From positions 1 through 64,000 of the forward strand of contig NC_134030.1 in assembly GCF_964204645.1 (NCBI RefSeq): a stretch of DNA of 64,000 nt, written 5' to 3'. The DNA comes from Tubulanus polymorphus. Taxonomy: Eukaryota; Animalia; Nemertea. Positions 25,951-62,566 of this stretch are shown here, piece after piece. The first letter of the stretch is position 1. Each line of letters opens with the position of its first letter. Below the pieces are notes generated by a model. That model saw nothing but the letters and a program-made list of their open reading frames with translations. It was not told the origin of the DNA and ran no database searches. The translations under genes were made by a program, and so were the position numbers.

Positions 25951-25965
25951 GTTGCTAAGGGTAAC
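25951..25965. promoter_or_regulatory. RFX X-box-like motif upstream of the Sp17-like first coding exon
   Basis: GTTGCTAAGGGTAAC ~210 bp upstream of the ATG; fits a ciliary/flagellar gene. Confidence 0.55.
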
Positions 25966-26172: not shown

Positions 26173-26329
26173 ATGGCAGTACCGTTCTCGAATACGAAAC
26201 TGAGAGTTCCGCGAGGATTTCAGAGTTTATTGGAGGGATTCGCTCGTGAAGTTCTTCGCAAACAACCCGAAGATATTTATACATTCGGAGCAGTCTATTT
26301 CGCTAATTTACTGAAAACAAGGGACGAAG
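26173..26329 (+). CDS. SPA17: Sp17/SPA17-like protein, RIIa dimerisation/docking domain exon
   Basis: MAVPFSNTKLRVPRGFQSLLEGFAREVLRKQPEDIYTFGAVYFANLLKTRDE+G; GTAAGA donor, phase 1; matches the Sp17 N-terminus pattern (PFSNT..R.P.GF..LLEG..RE.LR.QP). Confidence 0.9.
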
Positions 26330-30860: not shown

Positions 30861-31172
30861 ACCATCACATCTCTTCGCTGCCTCTCTCAGCTAAAACAGG
30901 GCGTGTTCATCACACTCTATACTCAAACACCACCACGCTGCCTCCCGATAGGATTATCAGATTATCTCGAAATAATTTGGATTATCCTCAGTTACTGGAA
31001 GGATTATCACAAGGATTTAATATTGAATATCTATTTTAATATTTACTGGTAAGATATAAAATAAGGTTTTCACTGTTCTATGTAGTGTATCACAGGCATT
31101 TTGAATATTTTACTTAAGGCCAGAGATGATTTGAATACCGGTATATATTGACTGTGTGATATTGTAGTAACA

Positions 31173-31926: not shown

Positions 31927-33897
31927 ATGGGTTGTCGTCAGAGCCACGAGAAAGAGGATTTACCGGATCATTTAAATCCACCTCTCGATCCACCACCGCA
32001 TAATGATCAAAACTCGGTGAATAAAATCAAACAAGTCGATAATATCGAAACAGCCAGTATCGGTATGGACGCTGATTTACCTTATATGGATGATAACGAA
32101 GGAACTCCGGACCCGGAGAAAAAACTGACAGAAGATGAAACAAAAACAGATGAATTCGTTCCTCCGAGTGAACCGATAGTGATTAAAGAGGAAAAAACTG
32201 AGAGTGAAACAACACAGGTGATAACAGAGACTGACGACAACGTCGAGAGAGAACGAGTTATAGTTCAAAAACAAACCAGAACTATTAGAGAAGAGGTACA
32301 TATCGTAAAGGAAGGTGATGAGGAAAATGAGGAGAACGACGATGAACCGGTTCAAATAGAACAAGTTCGATTAGTTCATAAAACAACTACAACAGTCGTA
32401 GAACCGATTCCTGCGGAGGAGCTTTTAGCTAAACAACAACAGGCTGCAGCGGAGCATGAGGTCGCTACTGATACTGAAATTATAACTCAACAACAGGTCG
32501 AAGAGGTAGAGACTGTCCCGGAACCGGTCCAAGAGGTTGAGTCCGTTCCTGAACCAGTCCAAGAGGTTGAGTCCGTTCCTGAACCAGTCCAAGAAGTTGA
32601 GATTGAACCGGAACCAGTCCAAGATGAAATAAAAGCAGAACCGGTTATCGCGGTAGAATGTAGCCCTGAACCAGTACCTGAACCAGCAGCTATAATTACT
32701 ACTCCTGTTGAAGAAGTTGAAGTTCAAGGTTTACCTGATCCAGAACCATTATCAGAACCATGTATGGATGGTTCTACAGAACACATAGAAATCAAACACG
32801 AATTAGAACAATTCAAACTGGAAGAATCAGCCCCAGTTGAAGAGGCTGCCCCAGTTGTGGAATCTACCCCAGTTGAGGAAGAACCAGTCCCAGTTGAAGA
32901 GGCTGCCCCAGTTGTGGAATCTACCCCAGTTGAGGAAGAACCAGTCCCAGTTGAAGAGGCTGCCCAAATTGTGGAATCTATCCCAGTTGAGGAGGAACCA
33001 GCCCCAGTTGAAGAGGCTACCCCAGCCCCAATTGTGGAATCTATCCCAGTTGAGGAGGAACCAGCCCCAGTTGAAGAGGCTGCTCCAGTTGAGGAACCAG
33101 CCCCAGTTGAAGAGGAGCCAACCCCAGATGAGGAGGAACCAGCCCCAGTTGAGGTGGAACCAGCCACAGTTGAAGAGCCAGCACCAGTTGTGGAATCTGC
33201 CACAGTTGAGGAGGAACCAACCCGAATTGAGGAGGCAGCCCCAGTTGAGGAATCTGCTTTAGTTGAGGAGGAACCAGCCACAGTTGAGGAGGAACCAGCC
33301 CCAGTTGTGGAGGCAGCCCCAGTTGAGGAATCTGCTTTAGTTGATCAGGAACCAGCCACAGTTGAAGAACCAGCCCCAGTTGAGGAGGAACCAGCCCCAG
33401 TTGCGGAGGAACCAGCCACAGTTGAAGAACCAGCCCCAGTTGAGGAGGAACCAGCCCCAGTTGAGGAGGAACCAGCCCCAGTTGCGGAGGAACCAGCCCC
33501 AGTTGAAGAACCAGCCCCAGTTGAAGAACCAGCCCCAGTTGAGGAGGAACCAGCCCCAGTTGAGGAATCTGCCCTGGTTGAAGAACCAACTCCAGTTGAA
33601 GAGGCAGCCCCAGTTGAAGAGACACCAACTCCAGCTGAGGAACCAGCCCCAGTCGATGAACCAGCCCCACCAGCCCCAGTCGAAGAACCATGTGATATAG
33701 TTGCAGATGAACCAATAATAGAAGATGAATTAGAACCGGCAGTTGATGAGAAGAATGAACCATTAGAACCACACGACGATATCATCGATAAAAACCAGGT
33801 GAATGGTCACCACGACGATATTCCCGTTACCAAGCAACCACCTGCACATGACGACCAACAATCAGAGCCCTCTATTGATCAACAAGCAGTCGAATAA
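31927..33897 (+). CDS. 656-aa acidic, Glu/Pro/Ala/Val-rich disordered protein with an MGC N-terminal acylation motif; nested in Sp17-like intron 1
   Basis: Acceptor tatttcag at 31918, ATG 8 nt later; MGCRQS start; unique N- and C-terminal sequence around degenerate in-frame EEPAPV repeats; candidate upstream non-coding exon donor at 31048 (G|GTAAGA). Confidence 0.82.
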   Translation: MGCRQSHEKEDLPDHLNPPLDPPPHNDQNSVNKIKQVDNIETASIGMDADLPYMDDNEGTPDPEKKLTEDETKTDEFVPPSEPIVIKEEKTESETTQVITETDDNVERERVIVQKQTRTIREEVHIVKEGDEENEENDDEPVQIEQVRLVHKTTTTVVEPIPAEELLAKQQQAAAEHEVATDTEIITQQQVEEVETVPEPVQEVESVPEPVQEVESVPEPVQEVEIEPEPVQDEIKAEPVIAVECSPEPVPEPAAIITTPVEEVEVQGLPDPEPLSEPCMDGSTEHIEIKHELEQFKLEESAPVEEAAPVVESTPVEEEPVPVEEAAPVVESTPVEEEPVPVEEAAQIVESIPVEEEPAPVEEATPAPIVESIPVEEEPAPVEEAAPVEEPAPVEEEPTPDEEEPAPVEVEPATVEEPAPVVESATVEEEPTRIEEAAPVEESALVEEEPATVEEEPAPVVEAAPVEESALVDQEPATVEEPAPVEEEPAPVAEEPATVEEPAPVEEEPAPVEEEPAPVAEEPAPVEEPAPVEEPAPVEEEPAPVEESALVEEPTPVEEAAPVEETPTPAEEPAPVDEPAPPAPVEEPCDIVADEPIIEDELEPAVDEKNEPLEPHDDIIDKNQVNGHHDDIPVTKQPPAHDDQQSEPSIDQQAVE

Positions 33898-39183: not shown

Positions 39184-39214
<31 letters not shown>

Positions 39215-39794
39215 GGGAGGGGTAAGGGAGAGAGAGAGGGAGAGAGAGTTAGAGAGAGGAGAGAGAGAGATGAAGGGCGGGTCTGAATAATATATTGATG
39301 TGAAATGATTTCTAATAAAGTTTTACCTGAAGCTAAATGTATATATTACTAAATTTACATACAACACAATCAATCAATCAATAATTCGAGCATCTTGTAT
39401 CTGTTGCGTACACAGTACCTGCGTACACGGTACCTGTTTACATGGTACCTGCGTAGCTGCCACTGACGACAGTCACTGTGTATTAATACTTTTGTTCATC
39501 CCTGATTTTAAACGTTTATCCGTAGATATTTGAGGGCTTTTTGAAATGTGAATAACAGTTTATAACATTGTCTTCAGTGACAACTCACGTCACATTCTGT
39601 ATATTTAGAAAATCCGTTGCAATTTATAGTTTTAGAAGCTATTTTTACATTTGATTGAATTGATCGATAGTTTTAGGGTTTGGTTTTATATGATCATAAT
39701 ACAATTTTTACTCCCTCAAAATCTCACATTTAAAACTCGCATCTTTTCATCATTTATCGATTTATCTGAAAATCTTTTTGGTTGCCATAGTAAC
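39092..39794. promoter_or_regulatory. Two RFX X-box-like motifs upstream of the alternative MGNSC exon
   Basis: GTTGCATAGCAAC (39092-39104) and GTTGCCATAGTAAC (39781-39794). Confidence 0.45.
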
Positions 39795-40472: not shown

Positions 40473-40515
<43 letters not shown>

Positions 40516-40778
40516 ACTGCTACTATTAGTGATCATCAGTTGATATTTATTGATGCAGTATCAATGATGCTGTTGGCAGTTGAATAAGTGACACTCACTG
40601 TGACACACGCGACACTCTCCTCTCCTCGTTACAACTCATTATTACTTGCTGGATTAATTCCTCATTTAAACCAACCAGTACTATATGGATTATCACATCG
40701 TTTAATCTACGCTGATCTGAGATTATCTCTACTCCGGGATTACCGCTATATTCTAGCTGTGATATTTAACTTGTACAA

Positions 40779-40839
40779 ATGGGAAATTCATGTAAAAAGC
40801 AAAACACTCACAAATATAAAGTGAATAATAATACAATAG
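40779..40839 (+). CDS. Candidate alternative first coding exon of the Sp17-like/IQ gene, encoding an N-terminal acylation peptide
   Basis: ATG GGA AAT TCA TGT... = MGNSCKKQNTHKYKVNNNTI+G, then a consensus donor AG|GTAAGT; phase 1, same as the RIIa exon. Confidence 0.65.
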
Positions 40840-40861
40840 GTAAGTGTTAAAATAATCAGCA

Positions 40862-44381: not shown

Positions 44382-44452
44382 ATGGTGGAATTGATCCTGT
44401 ATCAGAAGCCGCTCAACAAGAGGATCGGTATTACAATAATAAATCATTTAAT
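44382..44452 (+). CDS. SPA17: Sp17-like exon 2
   Basis: tttttatag acceptor and GTAAGT donor; DGGIDPVSEAAQQEDRYYNNKSFN resembles Sp17 DP....EDRFYNN. Confidence 0.85.
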
Positions 44453-44666: not shown

Positions 44667-44845
44667 AAACCTGATATCGACCCATCGGATCCTCAACAAC
44701 AAGATGCAGCTTTAGCGATTCAAACTAAATTCAGACAACATCATGCACAGAAACAAGTCGAGGATATAAAAGAAGAACAAGCTGCAGTTACAATACAGGC
44801 TGGTATGCGTGGTATGAGAGATAGACAGAGAGTAGCTCAACTCAA
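44667..44845 (+). CDS. SPA17: Sp17-like exon with 2 IQ motifs
   Basis: KPDIDPSDPQQQDAALAIQTKFRQHHAQKQVEDIKEEQAAVTIQAGMRGMRDRQRVAQL+AA; GTAAGT donor. Confidence 0.88.
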
Positions 44846-47802: not shown

Positions 47803-47863
47803 GTAGTCCAGCCTGTCACTCTATGAGGATACATCTATTTAAGTGAGTGTTTTGTATTTTAAG

Positions 47864-48005
47864 GAGTGATAGAGATGAATCTATGAAAGATAAAGAAGAA
47901 GAAATAGATATTGATTTAGAAGATCCTGAAGTTCAGGAAGCAGCGAGTAAAATTCAGGCTTCATTCCGAGGACATAAAGCGAGACAAGAGGTTCAAGAAT
48001 TGAAG
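47864..48005 (+). CDS. Acidic-IQ exon
   Basis: SDRDESMKDKEEEIDIDLEDPEVQEAASKIQASFRGHKARQEVQELK; AG...GTAGGT; phase 2 to 0. Confidence 0.88.
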
Positions 48006-48086
48006 GTAGGTTTACAGCTGTAGCATTGGTTAATTGATTATTAACTAACGAGGAAATAGTGTTAATTATCGATGAATGTTAATTAG

Positions 48087-48230
48087 GTGAAACAAGCTCT
48101 TCTAGAAGTAATAAACGATGCTGACAATGTCGACGAAGTTGACATTGATTTAAATGATCCTGAAGTTGAAAAAGCTGCCAATAAAATTCAGGCAGGATTT
48201 CGAGGTCATAAAATTCGTAAAGAGCTGAAG
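48087..48230 (+). CDS. Acidic-IQ exon (phase 0-0)
   Basis: VKQALLEVINDADNVDEVDIDLNDPEVEKAANKIQAGFRGHKIRKELK. Confidence 0.88.
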
Positions 48231-48260
48231 GTTTGTTACTGCACAACAACTATATTATAT

Positions 48261-48614
48261 ACTCATAGCCTACTGAGTACCACTCCTAGCCTACTGAGTA
48301 CCACTCCTAGCCTACTGAGTACCGCTCCTAGCTTACTGAGTACCGCTCCTAGCTTACTGAGTACCGCTCTAGCTTACTGAGTACCACTCATAGCTTACTG
48401 AGTACCACTCCTAGCTTACTGAGTACCACTCCTAGCTTACTGAGTACCACTCCTAGCTTACTGAGTACCACTCCTAGCTTACTGAGTACCACTCCTAGCC
48501 TACTGAGTACCACTCCTAGCCTACTGAGTACCACTCCTAGCCTACTGAGTACCACTCCTAGCCTACTGAGTACCACTCATAGCCTATATACTCCTTGAGT
48601 ACCACTCCTAGCCC
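48261..48614. repeat. 21-bp minisatellite
   Basis: (actcctagcctactgagtacc)n. Confidence 0.93.
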
Positions 48615-48694
48615 TTGTAGATGCTATGTTTTCATTCATCCTCACAAATTATTTATTATAGGTTGCTGTCACTTGACTTGCTGCTCTTTATCTA

Positions 48695-49000
48695 CTCCTC
48701 CTCTGCTGTCTCCTCCTCTGCTGTCTCCTCCTCTGCTGTCTCCTCCTCTGCTGTCTCCTCCTCTGCTGTCTCCTCCTCTGCTATCTCCTCCTCTGCTGTC
48801 TCCTCCTCTGCTGTCTCCTCCTCTGCTGTCTCCTCCTCTGCTGTCTCCTCCTCTGCTGTCTCCTCCTCTGCTGTCTCCTCCTCTGCTGTCTCCTCCTCTG
48901 CTGTCTCCTCCTCTGCTGTCTCCTCCTCTGCTGTCTCCTCCTCTGCTATCTCCTCCTCTGCTGTCTCCTCCTCTGCTGTCTCCTCCTCTGCTGTCTCCTC
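48695..49000. repeat. 15-bp minisatellite
   Basis: (tcctcctctgctgtc) ~20 copies. Confidence 0.95.
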
Positions 49001-49238
49001 TACTCAGCTCCTGTACATCCTCCAATAGCTTGACATCCTTTTACTTCTTTTGCTCCTCTCTACTCACTCTCCTCCTCACTGCTGCTCCTACTTGTTTCTT
49101 TTCAACTGCTCCTTAGATTCCTCCTTTATATCAGCACGTGTATATATTGCTAACAAGTATTGATTTAGATTTCAGAAGCCACCACTGGCATGTGATTATA
49201 ACTGTTCAATGTATTAATGTTTTAAACGATATTTTTAG

Positions 49239-49394
49239 ATGAAAAAACAAGAAGCAGAAAAAACAAATGAGAAGGAAACAGAAGAGGAAATAGATATAGA
49301 TTTAGAGGATCCTGAAGTCCAGGCCTCAGCGTTAAAAATACAAGCTAGTTTCCGTGGACACCAGGCGCGTAAAGAGGTTCATTCTATGAAGAAG
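49239..49394 (+). CDS. Acidic-IQ exon (phase 0-0)
   Basis: MKKQEAEKTNEKETEEEIDIDLEDPEVQASALKIQASFRGHQARKEVHSMKK; ttttag...GTTCGT. Confidence 0.88.
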
Positions 49395-49409
49395 GTTCGT
49401 TCGTCATCT

Positions 49410-52400
49410 GGAGAATCAGTTACCTCTATCTAACTCATTACACCTCTACAGGAGAATCAGTTACCTCTATCTAACTCATTACACCTCTACAGGTGAATCA
49501 GTTACCTCTATCTAACTCATTACACCTCTACAGGTGAATCAGTTACCTCTATCTAACTCATTACACCTCTACAGGTGAATCAGTTACCTCTATCTAACTC
49601 ATTACAACTCTACAGGAGAATCAGTTACCTCTATCTAACTCATTACACCTCTACAGGAGAATCAGTTACCTCTATCTAACTCATTACACCTCTACAGGAG
49701 AATCAGTTACCTCTATCTAACTCATTACACCTCTACAGGAGAATCAGTTACCTCTATCTAACTCATTACACCTCTACAGGAGAATCAGTTACCTCTATCT
49801 AACTCATTACACCTCTACAGGAGAATCAGTTACCTCTATCTAACTCATTACACCTCTACAGGTGAATCAGTTACCTCTATCTAACTCATTACACCTCTAC
49901 AGGAGAATCAGTTACCTCTATCTAACTCATTACACCTCTACAGGAGAATCAGTTACCTCTATCTAACTCATTACACCTCTACAGGAGAATCAGTTACCTC
50001 TATCTAACTCATTACACCTCTACAGGAGAATCAGTTACCTCTATCTAACTCATTACACCTCTACAGGAGAATCAGTTACCTCTATCTAACTCATTACACC
50101 TCTACAGGTGAATCAGTTACCTCTATCTAACTCATTACACCTCTACAGGTGAATCAGTTACCTCTATCTAACTCATTACACCTCTACAGGAGAATCAGTT
50201 ACCTCTATCTAACTCATTACACCTCTACAGGAGAATCAGTTACCTCTATCTAACTCATTACACCTCTACAGGAGAATCAGTTACCTCTATCTAACTCATT
50301 ACACCTCTACAGGTGAATCAGTTACCTCTATCTAACTCATTACACCTCTACAGGAGAATCAGTTACCTCTATCTAACTCATTACACCTCTACAGGTGAAT
50401 CAGTTACCTCTATCTAACTCATTACACCTCTACAGGAGAATCAGTTACCTCTATCTAACTCATTACACCTCTACAGGAGAATCAGTTACCTCTATCTAAC
50501 TCATTACACCTCTACAGGAGAATCAGTTACCTCTATCTAACTCATTACACCTCTACAGGTGAATCAGTTACCTCTATCTAACTCATTACACCTCTACAGG
50601 AGAATCAGTTACCTCTATCTAACTCATTACACCTCTACAGGAGAATCAGTTACCTCTATCTAACTCATTACACCTCTACAGGTGAATCAGTTACCTCTAT
50701 CTAACTCATTACACTTCTACAGGAGAATCAGTTACCTCTATCTAACTCATTACACCTCTACAGGAGAATCAGTTACCTCTATCTAACTCATTACACCTCT
50801 ACAGGAGAATCAGTTACCTCTATCTAACTCATTACACCTCTACAGGAGAATCAGTTACCTCTATCTAACTCATTACACCTCTACAGGAGAATCAGTTACC
50901 TCTATCTAACTCATTACACCTCTACAGGAGAATCAGTTACCTCTATCTAACTCATTACACCTCTACAGGTGAATCAGTTACCTCTATCTAACTCATTACA
51001 CCTCTACAGGTGAATCAGTTACCTCTATCTAACTCATTACACCTCTACAGGAGAATCAGTTACCTCTATCTAACTCATTACACCTCTACAGGTGAATCAG
51101 TTACCTCTATCTAACTCATTACACCTCTACAGGAGAATCAGTTTCCTCTATCTAACTCATTACACCTCTACAGGTGAATCAGTTACCTCTATCTAACTCA
51201 TTACACCTCTACAGGAGAATCAGTTACCTCTATATAACTCATTACACCTCTACAGGAGAATCAGTTACCTCTATCTAACTCATTACACCTCTACAGGAGA
51301 ATCAGTTACCTCTATCTAACTCATTACACCTCTACAGGAGAATCAGTTACCTCTATCTAACTCATTACACCTCTACAGGTGAATCAGTTACCTCTATCTA
51401 ACTCATTACACCTCTACAGGAGAATCAGTTACCTCTATATAACTCATTACACCTCTACAGGAGAATCAGTTACCTCTATCTAACTCATTACACCTCTACA
51501 GGTGAATCAGTTACCTCTATCTAACTCATTACACCTCTACAGGTGAATCAGTTACCTCTATCTAACTCATTACACCTCTACAGGAGAATCAGTTACCTCT
51601 ATCTAACTCATTACACCTCTACAGGAGAATCAGTTACCTCTATCTAACTCATTACACCTCTACAGGAGAATCAGTTACCTCTATCTAACTCATTACACCT
51701 CTACAGGTGAATCAGTTACCTCTATCTAACTCATTACACCTCTACAGGAGAATCAGTTACCTCTATCTAACTCATTACACCTCTACAGGAGAATCAGTTA
51801 CCTCTATCTAACTCATTACACCTCTACAGGAGAATCAGTTACCTCTATCTAACTCATTACACCTCTACAGGAGAATCAGTTACCTCTATCTAACTCATTA
51901 CACCTCTACAGGAGAATCAGTTACCTCTATCTAACTCATTACACCTCTACAGGTGAATCAGTTACCTCTATCTAACTCATTACACCTCTACAGTAGAATC
52001 AGTTACCTCTATCTAACTCATTACACCTCTACAGGAGAATCAGTTACCTCTATCTAACTCATTACACCTCTACAGGTGAATCAGTTACCTCTATCTAACT
52101 CATTACACCTCTACAGGAGAATCAGTTACCTCTATCTAACTCATTACACCTCTACAGGAGAATCAGTTACCTCTATCTAACTCATTACACCTCTACAGGA
52201 GAATCAGTTACCTCTATCTAACTCATTACACCTCTACAGGAGAATCAGTTACCTCTATCTAACTCATTACACCTCTACAGGTGAATCAGTTACCTCTATC
52301 TAACTCATTACACCTCTACAGGAGAATCAGTTACCTCTATCTAACTCATTACACCTCTACAGGTGAATCAGTTACCTCTATCTAACTCATTACACCTCTA

Positions 52401-55400
52401 CAGTAGAATCAGTTACCTCTATCTAACTCATTACACCTCTACAGGAGAATCAGTTACCTCTATCTAACTCATTACACCTCTACAGGTGAATCAGTTACCT
52501 CTATCTAACTCATTACACCTCTACAGGAGAATCAGTTACCTCTATCTAACTCATTACACCTCTACAGGAGAATCAGTTACCTCTATCTAACTCATTACAC
52601 CTCTACAGGAGAATCAGTTACCTCTATCTAACTCATTACACCTCTACAGGAGAATCAGTTACCTCTATCTAACTCATTACACCTCTACAGGTGAATCAGT
52701 TACCTCTATCTAACTCATTACACCTCTACAGGAGAATCAGTTACCTCTATCTAACTCATTACACCTCTACAGGTGAATCAGTTACCTCTATCTAACTCAT
52801 TACACCTCTACAGGAGAATCAGTTACCTCTATCTAACTCATTACACCTCTACAGGAGAATCAGTTACCTCTATCTAACTCATTACACCTCTACAGGAGAA
52901 TCAGTTACCTCTATCTAACTCATTACACCTCTACAGGAGAATCAGTTACCTCTATCTAACTCATTACACCTCTACAGGAGAATCAGTTACCTCTATCTAA
53001 CTCATTACACCTCTACAGGTGAATCAGTTACCTCTATCTAACTCATTACACCTCTACAGGAGAATCAGTTACCTCTATCTAACTCATTACACCTCTACAG
53101 GAGAATCAGTTACCTCTATCTAACTCATTACACCTCTACAGGAGAATCAGTTACCTCTATCTAACTCATTACACCTCTACAGGAGAATCAGTTACCTCTA
53201 TCTAACTCATTACACCTCTACAGGAGAATCAGTTACCTCTATCTAACTCATTACACCTCTACAGGTGAATCAGTTACCTCTATCTAACTCATTACACCTC
53301 TACAGGTGAATCAGTTACCTCTATCTAACTCATTACACCTCTACAGGAGAATCAGTTACCTCTATCTAACTCATTACACCTCTACAGGAGAATCAGTTAC
53401 CTCTATCTAACTCATTACACCTCTACAGGAGAATCAGTTACCTCTATCTAACTCATTACACCTCTACAGGTGAATCAGTTACCTCTATCTAACTCATTAC
53501 ACCTCTACAGGAGAATCAGTTACCTCTATCTAACTCATTACACCTCTACAGGTGAATCAGTTACCTCTATCTAACTCATTACACCTCTACAGGAGAATCA
53601 GTTACCTCTATCTAACTCATTACACCTCTACAGGAGAATCAGTTACCTCTATCTAACTCATTACACCTCTACAGGAGAATCAGTTACCTCTATCTAACTC
53701 ATTACACCTCTACAGGTGAATCAGTTACCTCTATCTAACTCATTACACCTCTACAGGAGAATCAGTTACCTCTATCTAACTCATTACACCTCTACAGGAG
53801 AATCAGTTACCTCTATCTAACTCATTACACCTCTACAGGTGAATCAGTTACCTCTATCTAACTCATTACACTTCTACAGGAGAATCAGTTACCTCTATCT
53901 AACTCATTACACCTCTACAGGAGAATCAGTTACCTCTATCTAACTCATTACACCTCTACAGGAGAATCAGTTACCTCTATCTAACTCATTACACCTCTAC
54001 AGGAGAATCAGTTACCTCTATCTAACTCATTACACCTCTACAGGAGAATCAGTTACCTCTATCTAACTCATTACACCTCTACAGGAGAATCAGTTACCTC
54101 TATCTAACTCATTACACCTCTACAGGTGAATCAGTTACCTCTATCTAACTCATTACACCTCTACAGGTGAATCAGTTACCTCTATCTAACTCATTACACC
54201 TCTACAGGAGAATCAGTTACCTCTATCTAACTCATTACACCTCTACAGGTGAATCAGTTACCTCTATCTAACTCATTACACCTCTACAGGAGAATCAGTT
54301 TCCTCTATCTAACTCATTACACCTCTACAGGTGAATCAGTTACCTCTATCTAACTCATTACACCTCTACAGGAGAATCAGTTACCTCTATATAACTCATT
54401 ACACCTCTACAGGAGAATCAGTTACCTCTATCTAACTCATTACACCTCTACAGGAGAATCAGTTACCTCTATCTAACTCATTACACCTCTACAGGAGAAT
54501 CAGTTACCTCTATCTAACTCATTACACCTCTACAGGTGAATCAGTTACCTCTATCTAACTCATTACACCTCTACAGGAGAATCAGTTACCTCTATATAAC
54601 TCATTACACCTCTACAGGAGAATCAGTTACCTCTATCTAACTCATTACACCTCTACAGGTGAATCAGTTACCTCTATCTAACTCATTACACCTCTACAGG
54701 TGAATCAGTTACCTCTATCTAACTCATTACACCTCTACAGGAGAATCAGTTACCTCTATCTAACTCATTACACCTCTACAGGAGAATCAGTTACCTCTAT
54801 CTAACTCATTACACCTCTACAGGAGAATCAGTTACCTCTATCTAACTCATTACACCTCTACAGGTGAATCAGTTACCTCTATCTAACTCATTACACCTCT
54901 ACAGGAGAATCAGTTACCTCTATCTAACTCATTACACCTCTACAGGAGAATCAGTTACCTCTATCTAACTCATTACACCTCTACAGGAGAATCAGTTACC
55001 TCTATCTAACTCATTACACCTCTACAGGAGAATCAGTTACCTCTATCTAACTCATTACACCTCTACAGGAGAATCAGTTACCTCTATCTAACTCATTACA
55101 CCTCTACAGGTGAATCAGTTACCTCTATCTAACTCATTACACCTCTACAGTAGAATCAGTTACCTCTATCTAACTCATTACACCTCTACAGGAGAATCAG
55201 TTACCTCTATCTAACTCATTACACCTCTACAGGTGAATCAGTTACCTCTATCTAACTCATTACACCTCTACAGGAGAATCAGTTACCTCTATCTAACTCA
55301 TTACACCTCTACAGGAGAATCAGTTACCTCTATCTAACTCATTACACCTCTACAGGAGAATCAGTTACCTCTATCTAACTCATTACACCTCTACAGGAGA

Positions 55401-56117
55401 ATCAGTTACCTCTATCTAACTCATTACACCTCTACAGGTGAATCAGTTACCTCTATCTAACTCATTACACCTCTACAGGAGAATCAGTTACCTCTATCTA
55501 ACTCATTACACCTCTACAGGTGAATCAGTTACCTCTATCTAACTCATTACACCTCTACAGTAGAATCAGTTACCTCTATCTAACTCATTACACCTCTACA
55601 GGAGAATCAGTTACCTCTATCTAACTCATTACACCTCTACAGGTGAATCAGTTACCTCTATCTAACTCATTACACCTCTACAGGAGAATCAGTTACCTCT
55701 ATCTAACTCATTACACCTCTACAGGAGAATCAGTTACCTCTATCTAACTCATTACACCTCTACAGGAGAATCAGTTACCTCTATCTAACTCATTACACCT
55801 CTACAGGAGAATCAGTTACCTCTATCTAACTCATTACACCTCTACAGGTGAATCAGTTACCTCTATCTAACTCATTACACCTCTACAGGAGAATCAGTTA
55901 CCTCTATCTAACTCATTACACCTCTACAGGTGAATCAGTTACCTCTATCTAACTCATTACACCTCTACAGGAGAATCAGTTACCTCTATCTAACTCATTA
56001 CACCTCTACAGGAGAATCAGTTACCTCTATCTAACTCATTACACCTCTACAGGAGAATCAGTTACCTCTATCTAACTCATTACACCTCTACAGGAGAATC
56101 AGTTACCTCTATCTAAC
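49410..56117. repeat. 41-bp intronic satellite (~163 copies) with higher-order structure
   Basis: (gg[a/t]gaatcagttacctctatctaactcattacacctctaca)n. Confidence 0.98.
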
Positions 56118-56300
56118 ACACTATTTTCAATTTTCAGGCTTGATTAGTAAGGTGTTGAGTTAAGGGTTTTGAGGCTGTCTATCTGGGACTGGTTATGTTA
56201 ATATATTGGTTCTGAATACTTCATGTTTATGTGAAATCGATAGAGTCACTAACACATACACCTCAATACACAGTAGTGACACTTATTTTACTAAACATAG

Positions 56301-56462
56301 GAAAATCAAACTAATGAAGATGAGAAATCCCAAAATGAGAAGGAAACAGAAGAGGAAATAGATATAGATTTAGAGGATCCTGAAGTCCAGGCCTCGGCGT
56401 TAAAAATACAAGCTAGTTTCCGTGGACACCAGGCGCGTAAAGAGGTTCATTCTATGAAGAAG
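56301..56462 (+). CDS. Acidic-IQ exon (phase 0-0), near-identical copy of the 49239 exon
   Basis: ENQTNEDEKSQNEKETEEEIDIDLEDPEVQASALKIQASFRGHQARKEVHSMKK. Confidence 0.88.
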
Positions 56463-56487
56463 GTTCGTTCGTTAATCCTCGCTTAAT

Positions 56488-56866
56488 GCTTTCCTCACCT
56501 GCCAGTGCAGCCTTCCTACCTCTAGACTCGGCAGTCGAGGGGCTTTCCTCACCTGCCAGTGCAGCCTTCCTACCTCTAGACTCGGCAGTCGAGGGGCTTT
56601 CCTCACCTGCCAGTGTAGCCTCCCTACCTCTAGACGCGGCATTCGAGGGGCTTTCCTCACCTGCCAGTGCAGCCTTCCTACCTCTAGACTCGGCAGTCGA
56701 GGGGCTTTCCTCACCTGCCAGTGTAGCCTCCCTACCTCTAGACGCGGCATTCGAGGGGCTTTCCTCACCTGCCAGTGCAGCCTTCCTACCTCTAGACTCG
56801 GCAGTCGAGGGGCTTTCCTCACCTGCCAGTGCAGCCTTCCTACCTCTAGACTCGGCAGTCGAGGGT
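56488..56866. repeat. 54-bp minisatellite
   Basis: gctttcctcacctgccagtgcagccttcctacctctagactcggcagtcgaggg x7, two unit variants. Confidence 0.95.
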
Positions 56867-56993
56867 CCTCAAATAATATCTAGCATGAATCTATTTCACG
56901 AATATCTCTAATCATTACTTTGATTATAATAATAATAATAATAATAATCTCTGATTTATTTTACAGGTAATTATTCTGTAATTCATTCACCAC

Positions 56994-57024
<31 letters not shown>

Positions 57025-57099
57025 TTCATATTTCAGTTTTAAATTCTCTATCAATCAGTGTTTCATGTATCTGTTAAGGAAGATGATGTATCCAACTGG

Positions 57100-57340
57100 T
57101 TCCCCTCAAGAGGTTCACACCCCTCCCCTCATGAGGTTCACACTCCCTCCCCTCATGAGGTTCACACCCCTCCCCTCAAGAGGTTTACACCCCTCCCCTC
57201 ATGAGGTTCACACTCCCTCCCCTCATGAGGTTCACACTCCCTCCCCTCAAGAGGTTCACACCCCTCCCCTCAAGAGGTTTACACCCCTCCCCTCATGAGG
57301 TTCACACTCCCTCCCCTCATGAGGTTCACACCCCTCCCTG
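57100..57340. repeat. 23-24-bp tandem repeat
   Basis: gaggttcacacccctcccctcat units. Confidence 0.88.
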
Positions 57341-57385
57341 GTTGATCTGCTTTATGATTTTACTCATGTATCTATGTGTGTTTAG

Positions 57386-57577
57386 GAAACACCTCCGGTC
57401 GAAGCGCCCCCTGGTGATGAACCGTCGCGATTAGAAACGCCCCCTGGTGTTGAACAGGAAGAGGTAGTCGATATTGATTTGACCGACCCGGAGGTCGCAG
57501 CCGCAGCCAATAAAATTCAAGCGAAATTCCGTGGAATTCAATTCCGTAAAAAAAAACAAACACAACAGAAACCAGCG
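57386..57577 (+). CDS. Acidic-IQ exon (phase 0-0)
   Basis: ETPPVEAPPGDEPSRLETPPGVEQEEVVDIDLTDPEVAAAANKIQAKFRGIQFRKKKQTQQKPA. Confidence 0.85.
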
Positions 57578-57807
57578 GTATATACCCCCCTCTTCCCCCC
57601 TCCCCCTCTCCCTCCTCCCTCTTCAGTTTCTGTGGATTTCAGTTTTCTCAGTGGATATTCTATTATTTTACAGTAGATGGTTAGAGCTGGTTTAAATCGT
57701 TACACCTGGTTTAAATCGTTAAACCTGGTTTTATCTCTCGTTCGATGTCATTTTCCTCATTTATTCTGATTATTTTTCATTTTTTTAATTCTATTTTGTA
57801 ACGTAAG

Positions 57808-57984
57808 GAATTATTACCGGATGATGATGTTGAGTATGAGGAAGTACGAGCTCCACCGTTACCGGATAAAATCCCTGAACTAATCGATTTAACAGACCGC
57901 GACGTCATAGAAGCGGCAAATAGAATTCAGGCTCAGTTCCGCGGTATTAAAACACGTCAGAAATTACAACCAATGATTATTGAG
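57808..57984 (+). CDS. IQ exon (phase 0-0)
   Basis: ELLPDDDVEYEEVRAPPLPDKIPELIDLTDRDVIEAANRIQAQFRGIKTRQKLQPMIIE. Confidence 0.82.
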
Positions 57985-58224
57985 GTGTGATTCTATGTTT
58001 CACTCACTCACACTCAGTCGATTAGAAGAATTAGTCAGTTAAACGATGTTAGTTAATTAGTGCGTTAATGTGTTTAATTAGTTAATTAGTATTTAATTAG
58101 TGCGATGTAATTTTGTTGTCATTTCAGGACGAGGATATTTTCATCCTGTCCTCGTTAGGTTTTTTCATCTCAGTTGAGTTTTGTTTATAATTTTAATCTC
58201 AATGTGTTTTATGTATTCATCCTA

Positions 58225-58712
58225 CAGCAGCTGCTGCTGCTGCTGCCGCTGCCGCCGCCGCCGCCGCTGCTGCTGTGGTGGAGACAGCTGCTGCTGTGGT
58301 GGAGACAGCTGCTGCTGCTGCTGCTGCTGCTGCCGCCGCCGCCGCCGCCGCCGCTGCTGCCGCCGCCGCCGCCGCTGCTGCTGTGGTGGAGACAGCTGCT
58401 GCTGCTGCTGCTGCTGCCGCCGCCGCCGCTGCTGCTGTGGTGGAGACAGCTGCTGCTGCTGCTGCTGCTGCTGCCGCCGCCGCCGCCGCCGCTGCTGCTG
58501 CTGCTGCTGTGGTGGAGACAGCTGCTGCTGCTGCTGCTGCTGCCGCTGCTGCCTTCGCCGCCGCCGCCGCTGCTGCTGCTGCTGCTGCCGCCGCCGCCGC
58601 CGCTGCTGCTGCTGTGGTGGAGACAGCTGCTGCTGCTGCTGCTGCTGCCGCCGCCGCCGCTGCTGCTGTGGTGGAGACAGCTGCTGCTGTGGTGGTGGCA
58701 GCTGCTGTAGCT
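58225..58712. repeat. Compound (CTG)n/(CCG)n trinucleotide array with gtggtggagacag spacers
   Basis: Seen directly; intronic by the flanking exon model. Confidence 0.92.
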
Positions 58713-58980
58713 GTCACTGGATTCATCTATTCCTCTCACCTCTATTTCAATGTTGACTCCTCTCAATCAAATCTATTTATTGTTTATAAATGTTGTTTAT
58801 CAATCTCTGATTTATTTATATTTCAACCGTTCAAAAAATCTCTTTATTTATTTTTCTCGACTTTTTTGTGTCTATTTCTGATTTTTCGATATTGAACTCT
58901 TTTTCGATGTAATCTCTGATTTATTTCGATGTGTATTATTTCTATTTATTGCTGCTATGGTTACTAATCCGGGTTTAAAG

Positions 58981-59097
58981 GATAAACCACGTCGTGTTTT
59001 GGGTATCGATGATTCGGAGGCGGTTGCCGCGGCGACTAAGATACAATCGTGTTATAAAGGTTATAAAACGCGAGTTCAATATCGCGGATATATCAAG
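58981..59097 (+). CDS. IQ exon, RVLG subtype (phase 0-0)
   Basis: DKPRRVLGIDDSEAVAAATKIQSCYKGYKTRVQYRGYIK. Confidence 0.8.
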
Positions 59098-59388
59098 GTA
59101 AAATATTGGTTACTACGGTAACGTCATACTGCAGCCATTGTTGTCGATAAGCACTATCTCTATCTTTCATTCACTCTTCTTAATCCGGGGTTTAATCGCG
59201 ACCTAATCAGGTTTTTCTTTTTGTAAAAATCTTAAATAGAAATTTCTCTTAATTTTATTTGTAACACGCGATATAGCTGAGTTTACACAAACTGACACTA
59301 GGAGTCGCTAGTGGCACATCACTCACCTGCCAGGGTTAATTTCTCTCTATCTCTCTCTCTCTCTTTCTATGTTTCTCTCTGGTGACAG

Positions 59389-59514
59389 GATAAAGCTATT
59401 CGAGTGTTAGGTATAGATGTCGATAATGAAGATATGCAAATAGCAGCAACTAAAATACAGGCAAATTATAGAGGCTACAAATCTCGCAAAGAGTATGATG
59501 AGTTATTGAATAAG
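59389..59514 (+). CDS. IQ exon, RVLG subtype (phase 0-0)
   Basis: DKAIRVLGIDVDNEDMQIAATKIQANYRGYKSRKEYDELLNK. Confidence 0.85.
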
Positions 59515-59612
59515 GTGAAAATATACCTCATAACTGACTACAATAGACTAGAATCTAGTATAGTATAGTATAGTATAGTATAGTATAGTATAGTTTTGTA
59601 TCTGCATGTATA

Positions 59613-59839
59613 GATACAATGATTGTAGTTTTTTTGATACAGTGATTTTAGTTTTCTTGATACAGTGATTGTAGTTTTTTCGATACAGTGATTGTAGTTT
59701 TTTCGATACAGTGATTGTAGTTTTTTCGATACAGTGATTGTAGTTTTTTCGATACAGTGATTGTAGTTTTTTTGATACAGTGATTGTAGTTTTTTCGATA
59801 CAGTGATTGTAGTTTTTTTGATTCAGTGATTGTAGTTTT
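59613..59839. repeat. 23-24-bp tandem repeat, preceded by (TAGTA)n
   Basis: gatacagtgattgtagttttttc units. Confidence 0.9.
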
Positions 59840-60011
59840 AAGTAAATCAATTTCATCATCAGTTTGATATTTTATAAATGTTTTTTGTTATTGTTGTTAA
59901 TTTGTTTATCACTGGTGTAAAAATTCTCACTATTTCAATAGATTTTAAATTTGCTGTTTATTTATTTTCATTTATTTTTTCACGATATTTTGTGGTTTTT
60001 TTTTGGTTTAG

Positions 60012-60158
60012 GAGAAAGCTAGACGAGTTTTAGGCGTAGATTTAGATGATCCTGAATTACAGCGAGCAGCTTTACAAATACAAGCAGGTTATAAAGGTTA
60101 TAGAACTCGTAAAGAATATAAAAAAGCAAAAAAAGAGAAAGAAAAACGTTTAAAAAAG
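60012..60158 (+). CDS. IQ exon, RVLG subtype (phase 0-0)
   Basis: EKARRVLGVDLDDPELQRAALQIQAGYKGYRTRKEYKKAKKEKEKRLKK. Confidence 0.85.
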
Positions 60159-60276
60159 GTTTGTTTATGTTGGCAGCAATGTCGGCAGCAATGTCAGTCA
60201 GCAATGTCAGTCAGCAATGTCAGTCAGCAATGTCAGTCAGTGTGGTATTGTTTAAACCCCGTCAGATCCAAGCTTA

Positions 60277-61413
60277 TGGTGACAGGTTCCTCCTACTCCT
60301 CAGATCTGGTGACAGGTTCCTCCTACTCCTCAGATCTGGTGACAGGTTCCTCCTACTCCTCAGATCTGGTGACAGGTCCCTCCTACTCCTCAGATCTGGT
60401 GACAGGTTCCTCCTACTCCTCAGATCTGGTGACAGGTTCCTCCTACTCCTCGGATCTGGTGACAGGTTTCTCCTACTCCTCAGATCTGGTGACAGGTTCC
60501 TCCTACTCCTCAGATCTGGTGACAGGTTCCTCCTACTCCTCAGATCTGGTGACAGGTTCCTCCTACTCCCCAGATCTGGTGACAGGTCCCTCCTACTCCT
60601 CAGATCTGGTGACAGGTTCCTCCTACTCCTCAGATCTGGTGACAGGTTCCTCCTACTCCTCAGATCTGGTGACAGGTTTCTCCTACTCCTCAGATCTGGT
60701 GACAGGTTCCTCCTACTCCTCAGATCTGGTGACAGGTTCCTCCTACTCCTCAGATCTGGTGACAGGTTCCTCCTACTCCCCAGATCTGGTGACAGGTCCC
60801 TCCTACTCCTCAGATCTGGTGACAGGTTCCTCCTACTCCTCAGATCTGGTGACAGGTTCCTCCTACTCCTCAGATCTGGTGACAGGTTCCTCCTACTCCT
60901 CAGATCTGGTGACAGGTCCCTCCTACTCCTCAGATCTGGTGACAGGTTCCTCCTACTCCTCAGATCTGGTGACAGGTTCCTCCTACTCCTCAGATCTGGT
61001 GACAGGTTCCTCCTACTCCTCAGATCTGGTGACAGGTCCCTCCTACTCCTCAGATCTCCAGTTCCTCCTCTATAATTATCTCCTCCAGTTCCTCCTCTAT
61101 AATTATCTCCTCCAGTTCCTCTATGATGATCTCCTCCAGTTCCTCCTCTATGATGACCTCCTCCAGTTCCTCCTCTATGATGACCTCCTCCAGTTCCTCT
61201 ATGATGATCTCCTCCAGTTCCTCCTCTATGATGATCTCCTCCAGTTCCTCCTCTATAATGATCTCCTCCAGTTCCTCCTCTATAATGATCTCCTCCAGTT
61301 CCTCCTCTATAATGACCTCCTCCAGTTCCTCCTCTATAATGATCTCCTCCAGTTCCTCCTCTATAATGATCTCCTCCAGTTCCTCCTCTATAATGACCTC
61401 CTCCAGTTCCTCC
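60277..61413. repeat. Two abutting minisatellites: 30-bp (60277-61057) and ~27-bp (61057-61413)
   Basis: (cagatctggtgacaggttcctcctactcct)n then (ctccagttcctcctctataatgatctc)n. Confidence 0.95.
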
Positions 61414-61846
61414 ATGTTTCCCATCAATCTGTTCGTTTATTCTTGCTTTTTGTGGCTTTTTTATAGTATATTCTATTTCAGCATGTTCAGTAGTATTTAA
61501 CGCATGACGTTTATTTGAATCTGAATAAATTTTTTATATTTCTATAGTAATAGATACAGCACTAATATTCTAATACATGCATGGACAATATTAACTGAAT
61601 AGAGCACTACATTTATTACCGCAATATATCAATTAGATAAGCATGTGATAATACAGGGTTATGGTAAGCATGTATAACTAGAGGGGTAAGCTGATATACA
61701 CGTATACTGATAAGTTGCTATTATTTCCACTATGTTTAGCTTAGAGATGGACTTCACGTTAAACACATCGGGTTTGGACTAAATATGGTAAATCTACGGT
61801 GGCTTTGATATGTTTATTACACTATAGATGGCGCTGTGTGAAATCA

Positions 61847-62416: not shown

Positions 62417-62448
62417 TATATATATATATATATGTTGTTTGTTTTAAG

Positions 62449-62490
62449 GGTGTTGATGTAAATCACGATGATACAGAAAGTCAACACGTT
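62449..62490 (+). CDS. Small acidic linker exon (phase 0-0)
   Basis: gttttaag|GVDVNHDDTESQHV|GTAAGT. Confidence 0.65.
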
Positions 62491-62566
62491 GTAAGTGTTC
62501 ATTCAATAGTTACATTCACCATTCATCTCAACTGTCATCAATTCAATCAATGTTGTTTAATGTTAG

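What the first reader, a model, noticed from the sequence alone, without database searches (positions are those of the whole stretch)
40779..40839. Hidden alternative first exon that would swap the AKAP-docking RIIa domain for a lipid anchor (MGNSCKK)
Seen: a 20-codon ORF MGNSCKKQNTHKYKVNNNTI+G ends at a consensus AG|GTAAGT donor in phase 1, the phase the 44382 exon requires. Known: Gly2 with a nearby Cys and basic residues is a typical myristoylation/palmitoylation membrane-targeting signal. Inference: one locus makes both a ciliary, AKAP-bound Sp17-type isoform and a membrane-tethered GAP-43/igloo-like IQ isoform from separate promoters, which would link the Sp17 and neuronal calpacitin protein types.
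Basis: partly seen in the sequence, partly recalled or inferred. Interest (0 to 1): 0.8.

Follow-up and report, generated by a model that had tools for sequence, protein, structure and literature searches.

The report
Alternative Met-Gly first exon of Sp17-like gene
A short Met-Gly-starting exon inside the first big intron of a ciliary Sp17-like calmodulin-binding gene probably gives a second protein form that loses its docking domain, as annotated gene models in molluscs also show, but no RNA data from this animal could be checked.

Summary
ATG 40779 opens 20 codons (MGNSCKKQNTHKYKVNNNTI) plus one G, then tag|GTAAGT at 40840. That is phase 1, the same phase as the RIIa exon donor (26330) and the shared acceptor at 44382.

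It is unlikely to be chance. It is the only donor scoring 7 or more in the 18-kb intron. It is one of only two Met-Gly ORFs there that end at any phase-1 donor. None was found at that donor score in 400 kb-strand of control genome.

Relatives support the exon swap. In every mollusc with an RIIa-less form among the hits (Biomphalaria, two Haliotis, Mytilus, Ruditapes, Solemya, Lymnaea) and in two transcript-derived proteins, that form starts with MG and joins the same shared exon. In Mytilus edulis the MG exon lies between the RIIa exon and exon 2, also in phase 1.

Limits:
- Lys at position 6 breaks the myristoylation consensus.
- A second MG ORF with a better consensus (MGCRQSH, 31927) sits in the same intron.
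- Two other relatives lack such an exon.

Verdict: probably a real alternative first coding exon (about 0.6). It is a new member of a kind that exists in database gene models; my searches of open-access papers found no description of it.

The parts
25951..25965 (+). RFX X-box-like motif GTTGCTAAGGGTAAC, about 210 bp upstream of the RIIa ATG (putative ciliary promoter element)
   Evidence: Pattern GTTGCY-N0-3-RGYAAC: 5 distinct sites in the window against 0.07 expected and 0 in a 200-kb genome sample. The relative L001 has GTTGCCTGGCAAC 117 bp upstream of its RIIa ATG.
26173..26329 (+). First coding exon of the Sp17-like gene: 52 codons of RIIa docking/dimerisation domain plus G; donor aag|GTAAGA at 26330, phase 1
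   Evidence: Pfam RIIa E 4.1e-12; PDB SPA17 7my4 E 6e-21, with Sp17 chains of 9fqr and 8j07 next; sequence.
30951..31048 (+). Three GGATTATC motifs followed by the only other strong donor in the intron (ctg|GTAAGA at 31049). Possibly a non-coding leader exon for the MGC ORF.
   Evidence: Its use as an exon is inferred, not shown.
31927..33897 (+). Second Met-Gly ORF in the same intron: MGCRQSHEKE..., 656 codons, acidic with PVEE repeats. An acceptor tttcag lies 8 nt before the ATG and the stop overlaps AATAAA. Internal donors: 32315 (phase 1, after 129 codons) and 33799 (phase 0).
   Evidence: Single copy. No homologues found. Predicted disordered, mean pLDDT 0.35.
39781..39794 (+). X-box-like motif GTTGCCATAGTAAC about 1 kb upstream of the candidate ATG, separated from it mainly by a 31-bp tandem array
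   Evidence: tandem array 39903-40393.
40687..40727 (+). GGATTATC (40687) and GATTATC (40721) motifs 52-92 nt upstream of the candidate ATG, shared with the 30951-31008 cluster
   Evidence: All 4 GGATTATC and 6 of 8 GATTATC in the 64-kb window lie in these two spots.
40779..40839 (+). Coding part of the candidate alternative first exon: MGNSCKKQNTHKYKVNNNTI plus G (phase 1)
   Evidence: Analogous MG exons in molluscs.
40840..40845 (+). Splice donor GTAAGT (tag|GTAAGT), the only donor scoring 7 or more in the 18-kb intron
44382..44452 (+). Shared exon 2, entered in phase 1 and left in phase 0: (D)GGIDPVSEAAQQEDRYYNNKSFN, the Sp17 'EDRFYNN' segment
   Evidence: Same 24-residue exon in relatives.
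44667..44845 (+). Shared exon 3 with two IQ motifs (KPDIDPSDPQQQDAALAIQTKFRQH...IQAGMRG...)
   Evidence: Pfam IQ E 2.4e-7. About 63% identical to P0001 and P0002. Donor actcaa|GTAAGT.
47847..64000 (+). At least 10 further exons, each with an acidic stretch plus an IQ motif (EEEIDIDLEDPEV..KIQASFRGH). The gene runs off the window end.
   Evidence: Exon limits here are approximate.

Best explanation
Bases 40779-40839 are most likely the coding part of an alternative first coding exon of a multi-IQ Sp17 (SPA17)-like gene. A transcript starting shortly upstream would splice from tag|GTAAGT (40840) to the shared phase-1 acceptor at 44382. The product would carry a 20-residue N-terminus (Gly2, Cys5, Lys-rich) in place of the 52-residue RIIa docking/dimerisation domain. 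It would keep the 'EDRYYNN' segment and the 12 or more acidic-IQ calmodulin-binding units. The RIIa form would dock on AKAP-type helices such as radial-spoke RSP3/RSPH3. The MG form could not, and would be free or held at membranes by its basic and possibly acylated N-terminus. Shown here: the sequence features, their rarity by chance, and the same exon swap in molluscs and in two transcript-derived proteins. Inferred: that this exon is transcribed and spliced in this animal, and any lipid modification.
For: (1) The anatomy is exact: ATG, 20 codons plus G, GTAAGT, the same phase and the same split-codon base G as the RIIa exon. (2) It is rare by chance. It is the only donor scoring 7 or more in the intron and one of two MG ORFs with any phase-1 donor. 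There were 0 such cases at 7 or more and 2 at 5 or more in 400 kb-strand of control DNA. From 24 kb onward the + strand has only 11 donors at 5 or more, and at least 5 of them end homology-supported exons. (3) Every RIIa-less form joined to exon 2 in relatives starts with MG. Cases: Biomphalaria LOC106073892 X4-X8 against RIIa form P0161, which is identical downstream; Haliotis rufescens and H. rubra X2 (MGGKLSRLADIVNKRRK); Mytilus trossulus X2; Ruditapes X2 (MGNNFSLFQGCTSKKK); Solemya; Lymnaea. (4) The genomic order RIIa exon (5001), MG exon (12548-12640, +G|gtaaac, phase 1), exon 2 (14141) holds in Mytilus edulis. The Solemya MG exon has 19 codons +G|gtaggc. (5) Transcript level: Logan contig L010 carries one uninterrupted ORF from MGCTPSKK through exons 2 and 3 and the IQ units. 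TSA-derived P0051 starts MGAILTTVCPC. (6) The GGATTATC motifs in the window occur only just upstream of this exon and of the other strong intronic donor.
Against: The peptide has no significant similarity to the mollusc MG exons beyond MG and a KK-N patch. Lys at position 6 departs from the NMT consensus, which 8 of 9 relatives meet. A second MG ORF with consensus MGCxxS lies in the same intron and could be the real counterpart. Two relatives with genomic data lack an MG exon there: L001, with a 430-bp intron, and Holothuria, with a 2.9-kb intron and 8 kb of upstream sequence. The mollusc models are automated annotations whose RNA support I could not inspect. My donor matrix is rough and written from memory.
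Confidence: 0.6

Rival explanations
1. The MGNSCKK ORF and its donor are a chance combination, or a cryptic site that is not used. The real Met-Gly alternative N-terminus of this gene is the MGCRQSH ORF at 31927, spliced from 32315 (phase 1) to exon 2 or from 33799 (phase 0) to exon 3.
For: MGCRQSH fits the myristoylation plus palmitoylation consensus (Cys3, Ser6), as 8 of 9 relatives do. About 290 non-repetitive codons stay open in only this frame. An acceptor lies 8 nt before its ATG, with a strong donor upstream at 31049. Its phase-1 donor lies after exactly 129 codons, the length of the MGC N-terminus of transcript-derived P0073.
Against: Its phase-1 donor is weak (3.0, against 7.2 for the candidate). 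The ORF stays open far beyond that donor and ends at a stop overlapping AATAAA, as a terminal exon would. It has no similarity to P0073 (E 3.6) and no homologues. The chance expectation for the MGNSCKK configuration is only about 0.01-0.09. Both exons could also be real.
Confidence: 0.2
2. The exon is transcribed but does not start a protein. It would be a cassette or poison exon entered through the acceptor at 40755-40756 after the RIIa exon, or a non-coding leader.
For: An AG with a modest pyrimidine tract lies 22 nt upstream of the ATG (tatattctag|CTGTG). Entered from the RIIa exon in phase 1, the frame reads 22 codons and stops at TGA inside the exon (read). That would give an RIIa-only stub or a nonsense-mediated-decay target.
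Against: In relatives the MG exon is used as the protein start, never as an internal exon of RIIa forms. The ATG has a good context, is in frame with all downstream exons, and has an in-frame stop just upstream.
Confidence: 0.1
3. This species makes only the RIIa form. The MGC ORF is an independent nested gene for a disordered acidic protein, and the MGNSCKK ORF is noise.
For: The two relatives with genomic data that are not molluscs (L001 and Holothuria) have no MG exon. The MGC ORF has its own stop and poly(A) signal.
Against: The MG form is seen in both mollusc classes sampled (gastropods and bivalves) and in two other transcript sets. Both intronic strong donors sit next to the only two MG ORFs and share the GGATTATC motif.
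Confidence: 0.1

Closest known systems
SPA17 / Sp17 (sperm autoantigenic protein 17), a radial-spoke component of motile cilia and flagella
   Same: N-terminal RIIa D/D domain (PDB 7my4 E 6e-21; Sp17 chains of 9fqr and 8j07), the following 'EDRFYNN' segment, and an IQ motif with an acidic lead-in. An X-box upstream fits a ciliary gene. Docking of this D/D class on RSP3-type AKAPs is described in PMC8339350.
   Different: Human Sp17 is 151 residues in the PDB chain, where one stretch matched the IQ-unit query. This gene has 12 or more IQ units spread over more than 20 kb, and a candidate RIIa-less Met-Gly isoform. My searches of open-access papers found no description of such an isoform for Sp17.
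MG-start isoforms of mollusc Sp17-like multi-IQ genes, known from database gene models only (e.g. Biomphalaria glabrata LOC106073892 X4-X8, Haliotis rufescens X2, Mytilus trossulus X2, Ruditapes philippinarum X2)
   Same: A short first coding exon starting Met-Gly, Lys/Arg-rich, ending in phase 1 with G, lying between the RIIa exon and shared exon 2, and replacing RIIa.
   Different: Most mollusc exons read MG[GAN][KN][LF]S with Ser at position 6 (Biomphalaria has Leu). Here it is MGNSCK with Lys6 and Cys5. There is no significant sequence similarity, and expression here is unverified.
Calpacitins (GAP-43/neuromodulin, neurogranin, PCP4) and Drosophila igloo
   Same: The IQ core KIQASFRGH and the acidic lead-in EEIDIDLEDPE match the PCP4 pattern EEFDIDMDAPE..AIQSQFRKF (PDB 2n77, E 9e-4). 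A Cys followed by basic residues at the N-terminus recalls the palmitoylated GAP-43 start (from memory). igloo is a myristoylated multi-IQ protein (from memory). MG-start multi-IQ proteins exist in locusts, a planthopper and Daphnia.
   Different: No Neuromodulin Pfam domains were found in the exons scanned. The neurogranin and neuromodulin IQ motifs match only weakly (E 0.15 and 0.63). The arthropod proteins share only the IQ part of the profile, not exons 2-3. Common descent is not shown.
BASP1/NAP-22 and MARCKS-type myristoylated basic N-termini
   Same: Haliotis and Solemya MG exons begin MGGKLS followed by basic residues, the same first six residues as BASP1 (BASP1 sequence from memory). 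The window's exon is likewise Gly2 plus Lys-rich.
   Different: This is probably convergence on the NMT consensus. The window's exon lacks Ser6, and the rest of the protein is unrelated.
PSD-95/SAP97 alpha versus beta isoforms (alternative first exons giving a palmitoylated N-terminus or an L27 docking domain; from memory)
   Same: The same logic: one locus, two first exons, lipid anchor versus protein-docking domain.
   Different: An unrelated protein family; cited only as a known kind of mechanism.

Membership tests
SPA17/Sp17 family (gene as a whole) | N-terminal RIIa docking/dimerisation domain | tested here: met
   Pfam PF02197 E 4.1e-12. Best PDB matches are SPA17/Sp17 chains, E 6e-21 to 1e-14. 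By construction the MG isoform would lack it.
SPA17/Sp17 family (gene as a whole) | Conserved segment ..EDRFYNN.. directly after RIIa, entered in phase 1 | tested here: met
   Exon 44382-44452 reads (D)GGIDPVSEAAQQEDRYYNNKSFN. The same 24-residue exon is found in molluscs, Holothuria and L001.
SPA17/Sp17 family (gene as a whole) | IQ calmodulin-binding motif downstream | tested here: met
   Pfam IQ in every exon tested. An Sp17 chain matches an IQ unit at E 1.7e-4.
MG-type alternative first exon of spiralian Sp17-like genes (database models) | Lies between the RIIa exon and shared exon 2 on the same strand | tested here: met
   Window: 26173, 40779, 44382. Mytilus edulis L012: 5001, 12548, 14141.
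MG-type alternative first exon of spiralian Sp17-like genes (database models) | Starts Met-Gly and ends in phase 1 with G as first base of the split codon | tested here: met
   Compare Solemya and Mytilus.
MG-type alternative first exon of spiralian Sp17-like genes (database models) | Ser/Thr at position 6 followed by a basic cluster | tested here: not met
   Position 6 is Lys, although the basic cluster is present (K6, K7, K12, K14). 8 of 9 relatives have Ser or Thr; Biomphalaria has Leu.
MG-type alternative first exon of spiralian Sp17-like genes (database models) | Seen spliced to exon 2 in transcripts | not testable with these tools
No own-species transcript protein turned up.
N-myristoylated proteins (NMT substrates; PROSITE PS00008 pattern recalled from memory) | Gly at position 2 and an uncharged, non-aromatic, non-Pro residue at position 3 | tested here: met
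   M-G-N.
N-myristoylated proteins (NMT substrates; PROSITE PS00008 pattern recalled from memory) | Small uncharged residue (S/T/A/G/C/N) at position 6 | tested here: not met
   Lys6 in MGNSCKK. The other intronic ORF, MGCRQSH, meets it.
N-myristoylated proteins (NMT substrates; PROSITE PS00008 pattern recalled from memory) | Demonstrated acylation | not testable with these tools
   Needs metabolic labelling or an NMT assay.
GAP-43/neuromodulin family | Neuromodulin / Neuromodulin_N Pfam domains | tested here: not met
   Only IQ (and RIIa) were found in the exons scanned. The 20-residue exon itself is too short to scan.
GAP-43/neuromodulin family | N-terminal Cys next to basic residues (palmitoylation/membrane motif) | tested here: inconclusive
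   Cys5 followed by KK is present. This is a resemblance only.

The most novel reading that the evidence does not exclude
The Sp17 locus of spiralians, and perhaps of the protostome ancestor, is a dual-purpose gene. From one set of IQ exons it makes an axoneme-docked calmodulin store (RIIa form) and a membrane-tethered, BASP1/GAP-43/igloo-like calmodulin store (MG form). The stand-alone calpacitin-type genes of arthropods (igloo-like MGC multi-IQ proteins) and vertebrates (GAP-43, neurogranin, PCP4) would then descend from the MG isoform after loss of the RIIa exon.
Probability: 0.15. Interest if true: 0.85.

Novelty: new member of a known kind. Interest (0 to 1): 0.6.

Why it matters
Sp17 is treated as a sperm and ciliary radial-spoke protein whose RIIa domain fixes it to AKAP-type partners. 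If the same locus regularly makes an RIIa-less form with a basic, probably acylated N-terminus, then many calmodulin-binding IQ units can be placed either on the axoneme or at membranes simply by choice of first exon. The mollusc gene models and two transcript sets indicate this, and this window probably adds another case. My searches of open-access papers found no description of it. It gives a concrete and testable bridge between Sp17 and the calpacitin/BASP1 type of neuronal calmodulin buffers. Suitable tests are exon-specific in situ probes, G2A and C5S fusions, and isoform-specific knock-outs. For annotation, it argues that short Met-Gly first exons in large repeat-filled introns should be looked for in Sp17-like genes.

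Tried and rejected
RNA evidence:
I did not re-send or vary the request, so read laying was never used.
- I looked for own-species transcript proteins through the protein collections. Exon 3 found only two 63-64% relatives, and the exact MGC ORF is not on record.

Spliced model:
- All searches were exon by exon, by reference.

Homology of the MG ORFs:
- The MGC ORF has no homologues among 8000 scored candidates and no paralogue in the genome.
- It has no similarity to the 129-residue N-terminus of P0073.
- The Atlas gave only noise and a disordered model.
- The candidate peptide does not align convincingly with the mollusc MG exons.

Own genome:
- The candidate region and the RIIa exon are single copy, so no paralogue is available for comparison.

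Relatives' loci:
- P0153, P0169, P0162 and P0155 (the Lineus protein, which had the highest-identity matches to the RIIa exon and exon 3 among the retrieved proteins) are not on record.
- In the Solemya and Lymnaea loci the RIIa exon is not within 10 kb upstream of the MG exon.
- L001 and Holothuria have no MG exon.
- GGATTATC is not found upstream of the mollusc MG exons.

Other limits:
- I first guessed that the excess of mid-score donors on the + strand came from the arrays of the RING gene.

Full report
**What is in the sequence.** The window is the first 64 kb of a 23-Mb contig of a 268-Mb eukaryotic assembly. On the + strand lies an Sp17 (SPA17)-like gene.

Its first coding exon starts at ATG 26173 and encodes 52 residues, MAVPFSNTKLRVPRGFQSLLEGFAREVLRKQPEDIYTFGAVYFANLLKTRDE. 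It then carries one G and the donor aag|GTAAGA at 26330. This exon is an RIIa docking/dimerisation domain (Pfam E 4.1e-12). Its best solved-structure matches are SPA17/Sp17 chains: 7my4 at E 6e-21, then 9fqr and 8j07.

The next coding exon is 18 kb downstream at 44382-44452. It is entered in phase 1 and reads (D)GGIDPVSEAAQQEDRYYNNKSFN, the Sp17 'EDRFYNN' segment. Exon 3 (44667-44845) and at least ten later exons each carry an acidic stretch plus an IQ motif, of the type EEEIDIDLEDPEVQEAASKIQASFRGHKARQEV. One such unit matches Chlamydomonas radial spoke protein 23 (E 3.6e-9), Sp17 (1.7e-4) and PCP4 (9e-4). It matches the neurogranin and neuromodulin IQ motifs only weakly (E 0.15 and 0.63).

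**The observation.** It is correct as written.
- ATG 40779 opens 20 codons, MGNSCKKQNTHKYKVNNNTI.
- A G follows at 40839, then GTAAGT at 40840.
- This is phase 1 with G as the first base of the split codon, exactly like the RIIa exon. Either exon joined to 44382 gives Asp and then GGIDP.
- The start context is gtacaaATGG, and an in-frame TAA lies four codons upstream.

**Is it more than chance?** I scored donors with a rough consensus matrix written from memory.
- In the 18-kb intron only two + strand donors score 5 or more (31049 and 40840), and only 40840 scores 7 or more. It is the only one with an upstream in-frame ATG in phase 1.
- With the threshold lowered to 0 there are 113 ATG/donor pairs in phase 1. 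Only two start codons among them are followed by Gly: 40779 and 31927.
- In 200 kb sampled elsewhere in the genome, both strands, there were 25 donors at 7 or more. Five had a phase-1 ATG ORF and none started MG. At 5 or more there were two MG cases.
- That puts the chance expectation for the intron at roughly 0.01-0.09.
- From 24 kb onward the + strand has only 11 donors at 5 or more. At least five of them end homology-supported exons.

A profile of exon 3 was searched against 1.84 billion representative proteins. It found many RIIa-plus-multi-IQ orthologues in which exon 3 begins at residue 74-77. It also found proteins in which the same exons 2-3 follow a short N-terminus that starts with MG. 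A follow-up word search with the Biomphalaria form made the pattern clear. Among 84 mollusc proteins, every one without RIIa starts MG and joins at the same point, with downstream sequence identical to the RIIa forms of the same species:

| Species and form | N-terminus before the shared exon |
|---|---|
| Biomphalaria glabrata LOC106073892 X4-X8 (RIIa form is P0161) | MGAAVLCQK... |
| Haliotis rufescens X2 | MGGKLSRLADIVNKRRKSDSTT |
| Haliotis rubra X2 | MGGKLSRLADIVNKRRKSDANT |
| Mytilus trossulus X2 | MGGKFSRLKNFVESKKRN... |
| Ruditapes philippinarum X2 | MGNNFSLFQGCTSKKKNSGKS... |
| Solemya velum | MGGKLSRLRDTINKKRNAE |
| Lymnaea stagnalis | MGAKFSKFTDTVSKRF... |

Two cases are transcript-derived.
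- Logan contig L010 is 1194 bp and carries one uninterrupted ORF running MGCTPSKK..., then AGGVDP..EDRYYNN, then exon 3 and the IQ units.
- P0051 is a complete ORF from a transcriptome assembly filed under the gregarine Siedleckia. It is most likely from the animal host (my inference), and it starts MGAILTTVCPC.

At the genome level:
- Mytilus edulis has the RIIa exon at 5001, the MG exon at 12548-12640 (31 codons +G|gtaaac, phase 1) and exon 2 at 14141. That is the order and phase seen in the window.
- The Solemya MG exon has 19 codons +G|gtaggc and lies 16 kb upstream of exon 2.
- The Lymnaea MG exon lies 5 kb upstream of exon 2.

Not all animals have it. The relative L001 has only a 430-bp intron with no MG ORF. 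Holothuria has none in its 2.9-kb intron or in the 8 kb upstream.

1. No RNA of this species was seen. Expression here is therefore inferred.
2. The peptide is not a textbook NMT substrate. Position 6 is Lys, while the PROSITE pattern (recalled from memory) and 8 of 9 relatives have Ser or Thr there. Cys5 followed by Lys-Lys is closer to the GAP-43 style of palmitoylated basic start, but that is only a resemblance.
3. A second Met-Gly ORF sits in the same intron at 31927-33897: MGCRQSHEKE..., with Cys3 and Ser6 (consensus).
   - It has 656 codons, is acidic with PVEE repeats, and is predicted disordered.
   - An acceptor lies 8 nt before its ATG, and the intron's only other strong donor (31049) lies 870 bp upstream.
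   - Its stop overlaps AATAAA.
   - It has a weak phase-1 donor after exactly 129 codons, which is the length of the P0073 N-terminus, but no sequence similarity to it.
   - It also has a phase-0 donor at 33799 that would fit exon 3.
   - It may be a nested gene, another alternative first exon, or both. It has no detectable homologues.
4. There is no significant sequence similarity between MGNSCKK... and the mollusc exons.

**Promoter hints (weak, within-locus).**
- All four GGATTATC motifs in the 64-kb window lie in two places: three at 30951-31008, just before donor 31049, and one at 40687, 92 nt before the candidate ATG. Six of eight GATTATC motifs lie in the same two places. The total count is not above chance; the placement is what stands out.
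- The RFX X-box pattern GTTGCY-N0-3-RGYAAC occurs at five sites in the window, against 0.07 expected and none in the 200-kb sample.
- One X-box lies 210 bp upstream of the RIIa ATG. The relative L001 has one 117 bp upstream of its own RIIa ATG.
- Another lies at 39781, about 1 kb upstream of the candidate exon and separated from it mostly by a 31-bp tandem array.
- If functional, this points to expression in RFX-positive (ciliated) cells rather than to a clean testis-versus-neuron split.

**Mechanism proposed.** Two or three alternative first coding exons feed one phase-1 acceptor.
- The RIIa form can dimerise and dock on amphipathic helices of AKAP-type partners such as radial-spoke RSP3. This role of the SPA17 D/D domain is described in PMC8339350.
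- The MG form keeps all calmodulin-binding IQ units but cannot dock. Its basic N-terminus with Cys may hold it at membranes.
- Shown here: the anatomy, its rarity by chance, and the conserved exon swap in molluscs.
- Inferred: use of this exon in this species, acylation, and cell type.

**Verdict.** This is probably a real alternative first coding exon (about 0.6). It is the local member of an MG-type exon class that exists in mollusc gene models, and my searches of open-access papers found no description of that class. The lipid-anchor reading is plausible but weaker here than in molluscs. The evolutionary link to GAP-43 and igloo remains an analogy.

Noticed in passing
window 31927-33897 (+): A 656-codon ORF starting MGCRQSHEKE (consensus dual-acylation start). 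It is acidic with PVEE/EEPAPVEE repeats, single copy, without homologues, and predicted disordered. An acceptor lies 8 nt before the ATG and the stop overlaps AATAAA. It is nested in the first intron of the Sp17-like gene, on the same strand.
   Followed up: partly
window 18647-18661, 23246-23258, 25951-25965, 33826-33838 (-), 39781-39794: Five RFX X-box-like motifs (GTTGCY-N0-3-RGYAAC) in 64 kb, against 0.07 expected from shuffles and none in 200 kb sampled elsewhere in the genome. Neighbouring genes (an LRR gene on the - strand at 18.5-21 kb and a RING gene at 21.9-24.7 kb) may also be ciliary targets.
   Followed up: partly
window 30951-31008 and 40687-40727 (+): All GGATTATC motifs in the window cluster just upstream of the only two strong splice donors in the 18-kb intron. 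The motif contains both a TAATCC-type homeodomain site and a GATA site on the opposite strand.
   Followed up: partly
window 49410-56117, with 49239-49430 and 56301-56483: A 6.7-kb satellite (41-bp unit, 164 copies, 98% identity) lies between two copies of the same IQ exon core. The copies share about 140 nt with one mismatch. This is either a recent exon duplication around an expanding array or an assembly effect.
   Followed up: partly
window 26330-44381: 48% of the first intron is tandem repeats. The same intron is 430 bp in relative L001, 2.9 kb in Holothuria and 9 kb in Mytilus edulis. The window is the very start of a 23-Mb contig, so this may be subtelomeric expansion.
   Followed up: partly
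window 8000-15000 (+): A tandem array carries about 126 copies of a good splice-donor-like site (score 5 or more), which inflates donor counts on the + strand.
   Followed up: no
window 25182 and 25314 (+): Two very strong donors (cag|GTGAGT) sit in a CpG-rich stretch about 1 kb upstream of the RIIa exon, and an acceptor ttttattttcag lies at 26104. The RIIa form may have non-coding leader exons.
   Followed up: no
P0051 (EukProt, Siedleckia nematoides transcriptome): A complete metazoan-type Sp17-like MG-start multi-IQ protein is filed under an apicomplexan parasite of polychaetes. It is probably host contamination of that transcriptome.
   Followed up: no
P0062, P0078, P0005 (Schistocerca, Nilaparvata, Daphnia): Arthropod multi-IQ proteins of 1500-1950 residues start with MGC/MGS acylation-type N-termini and carry misleading automatic names ('mucin-17-like', 'A-kinase anchor protein 12'). 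They may be igloo-type relatives.
   Followed up: no
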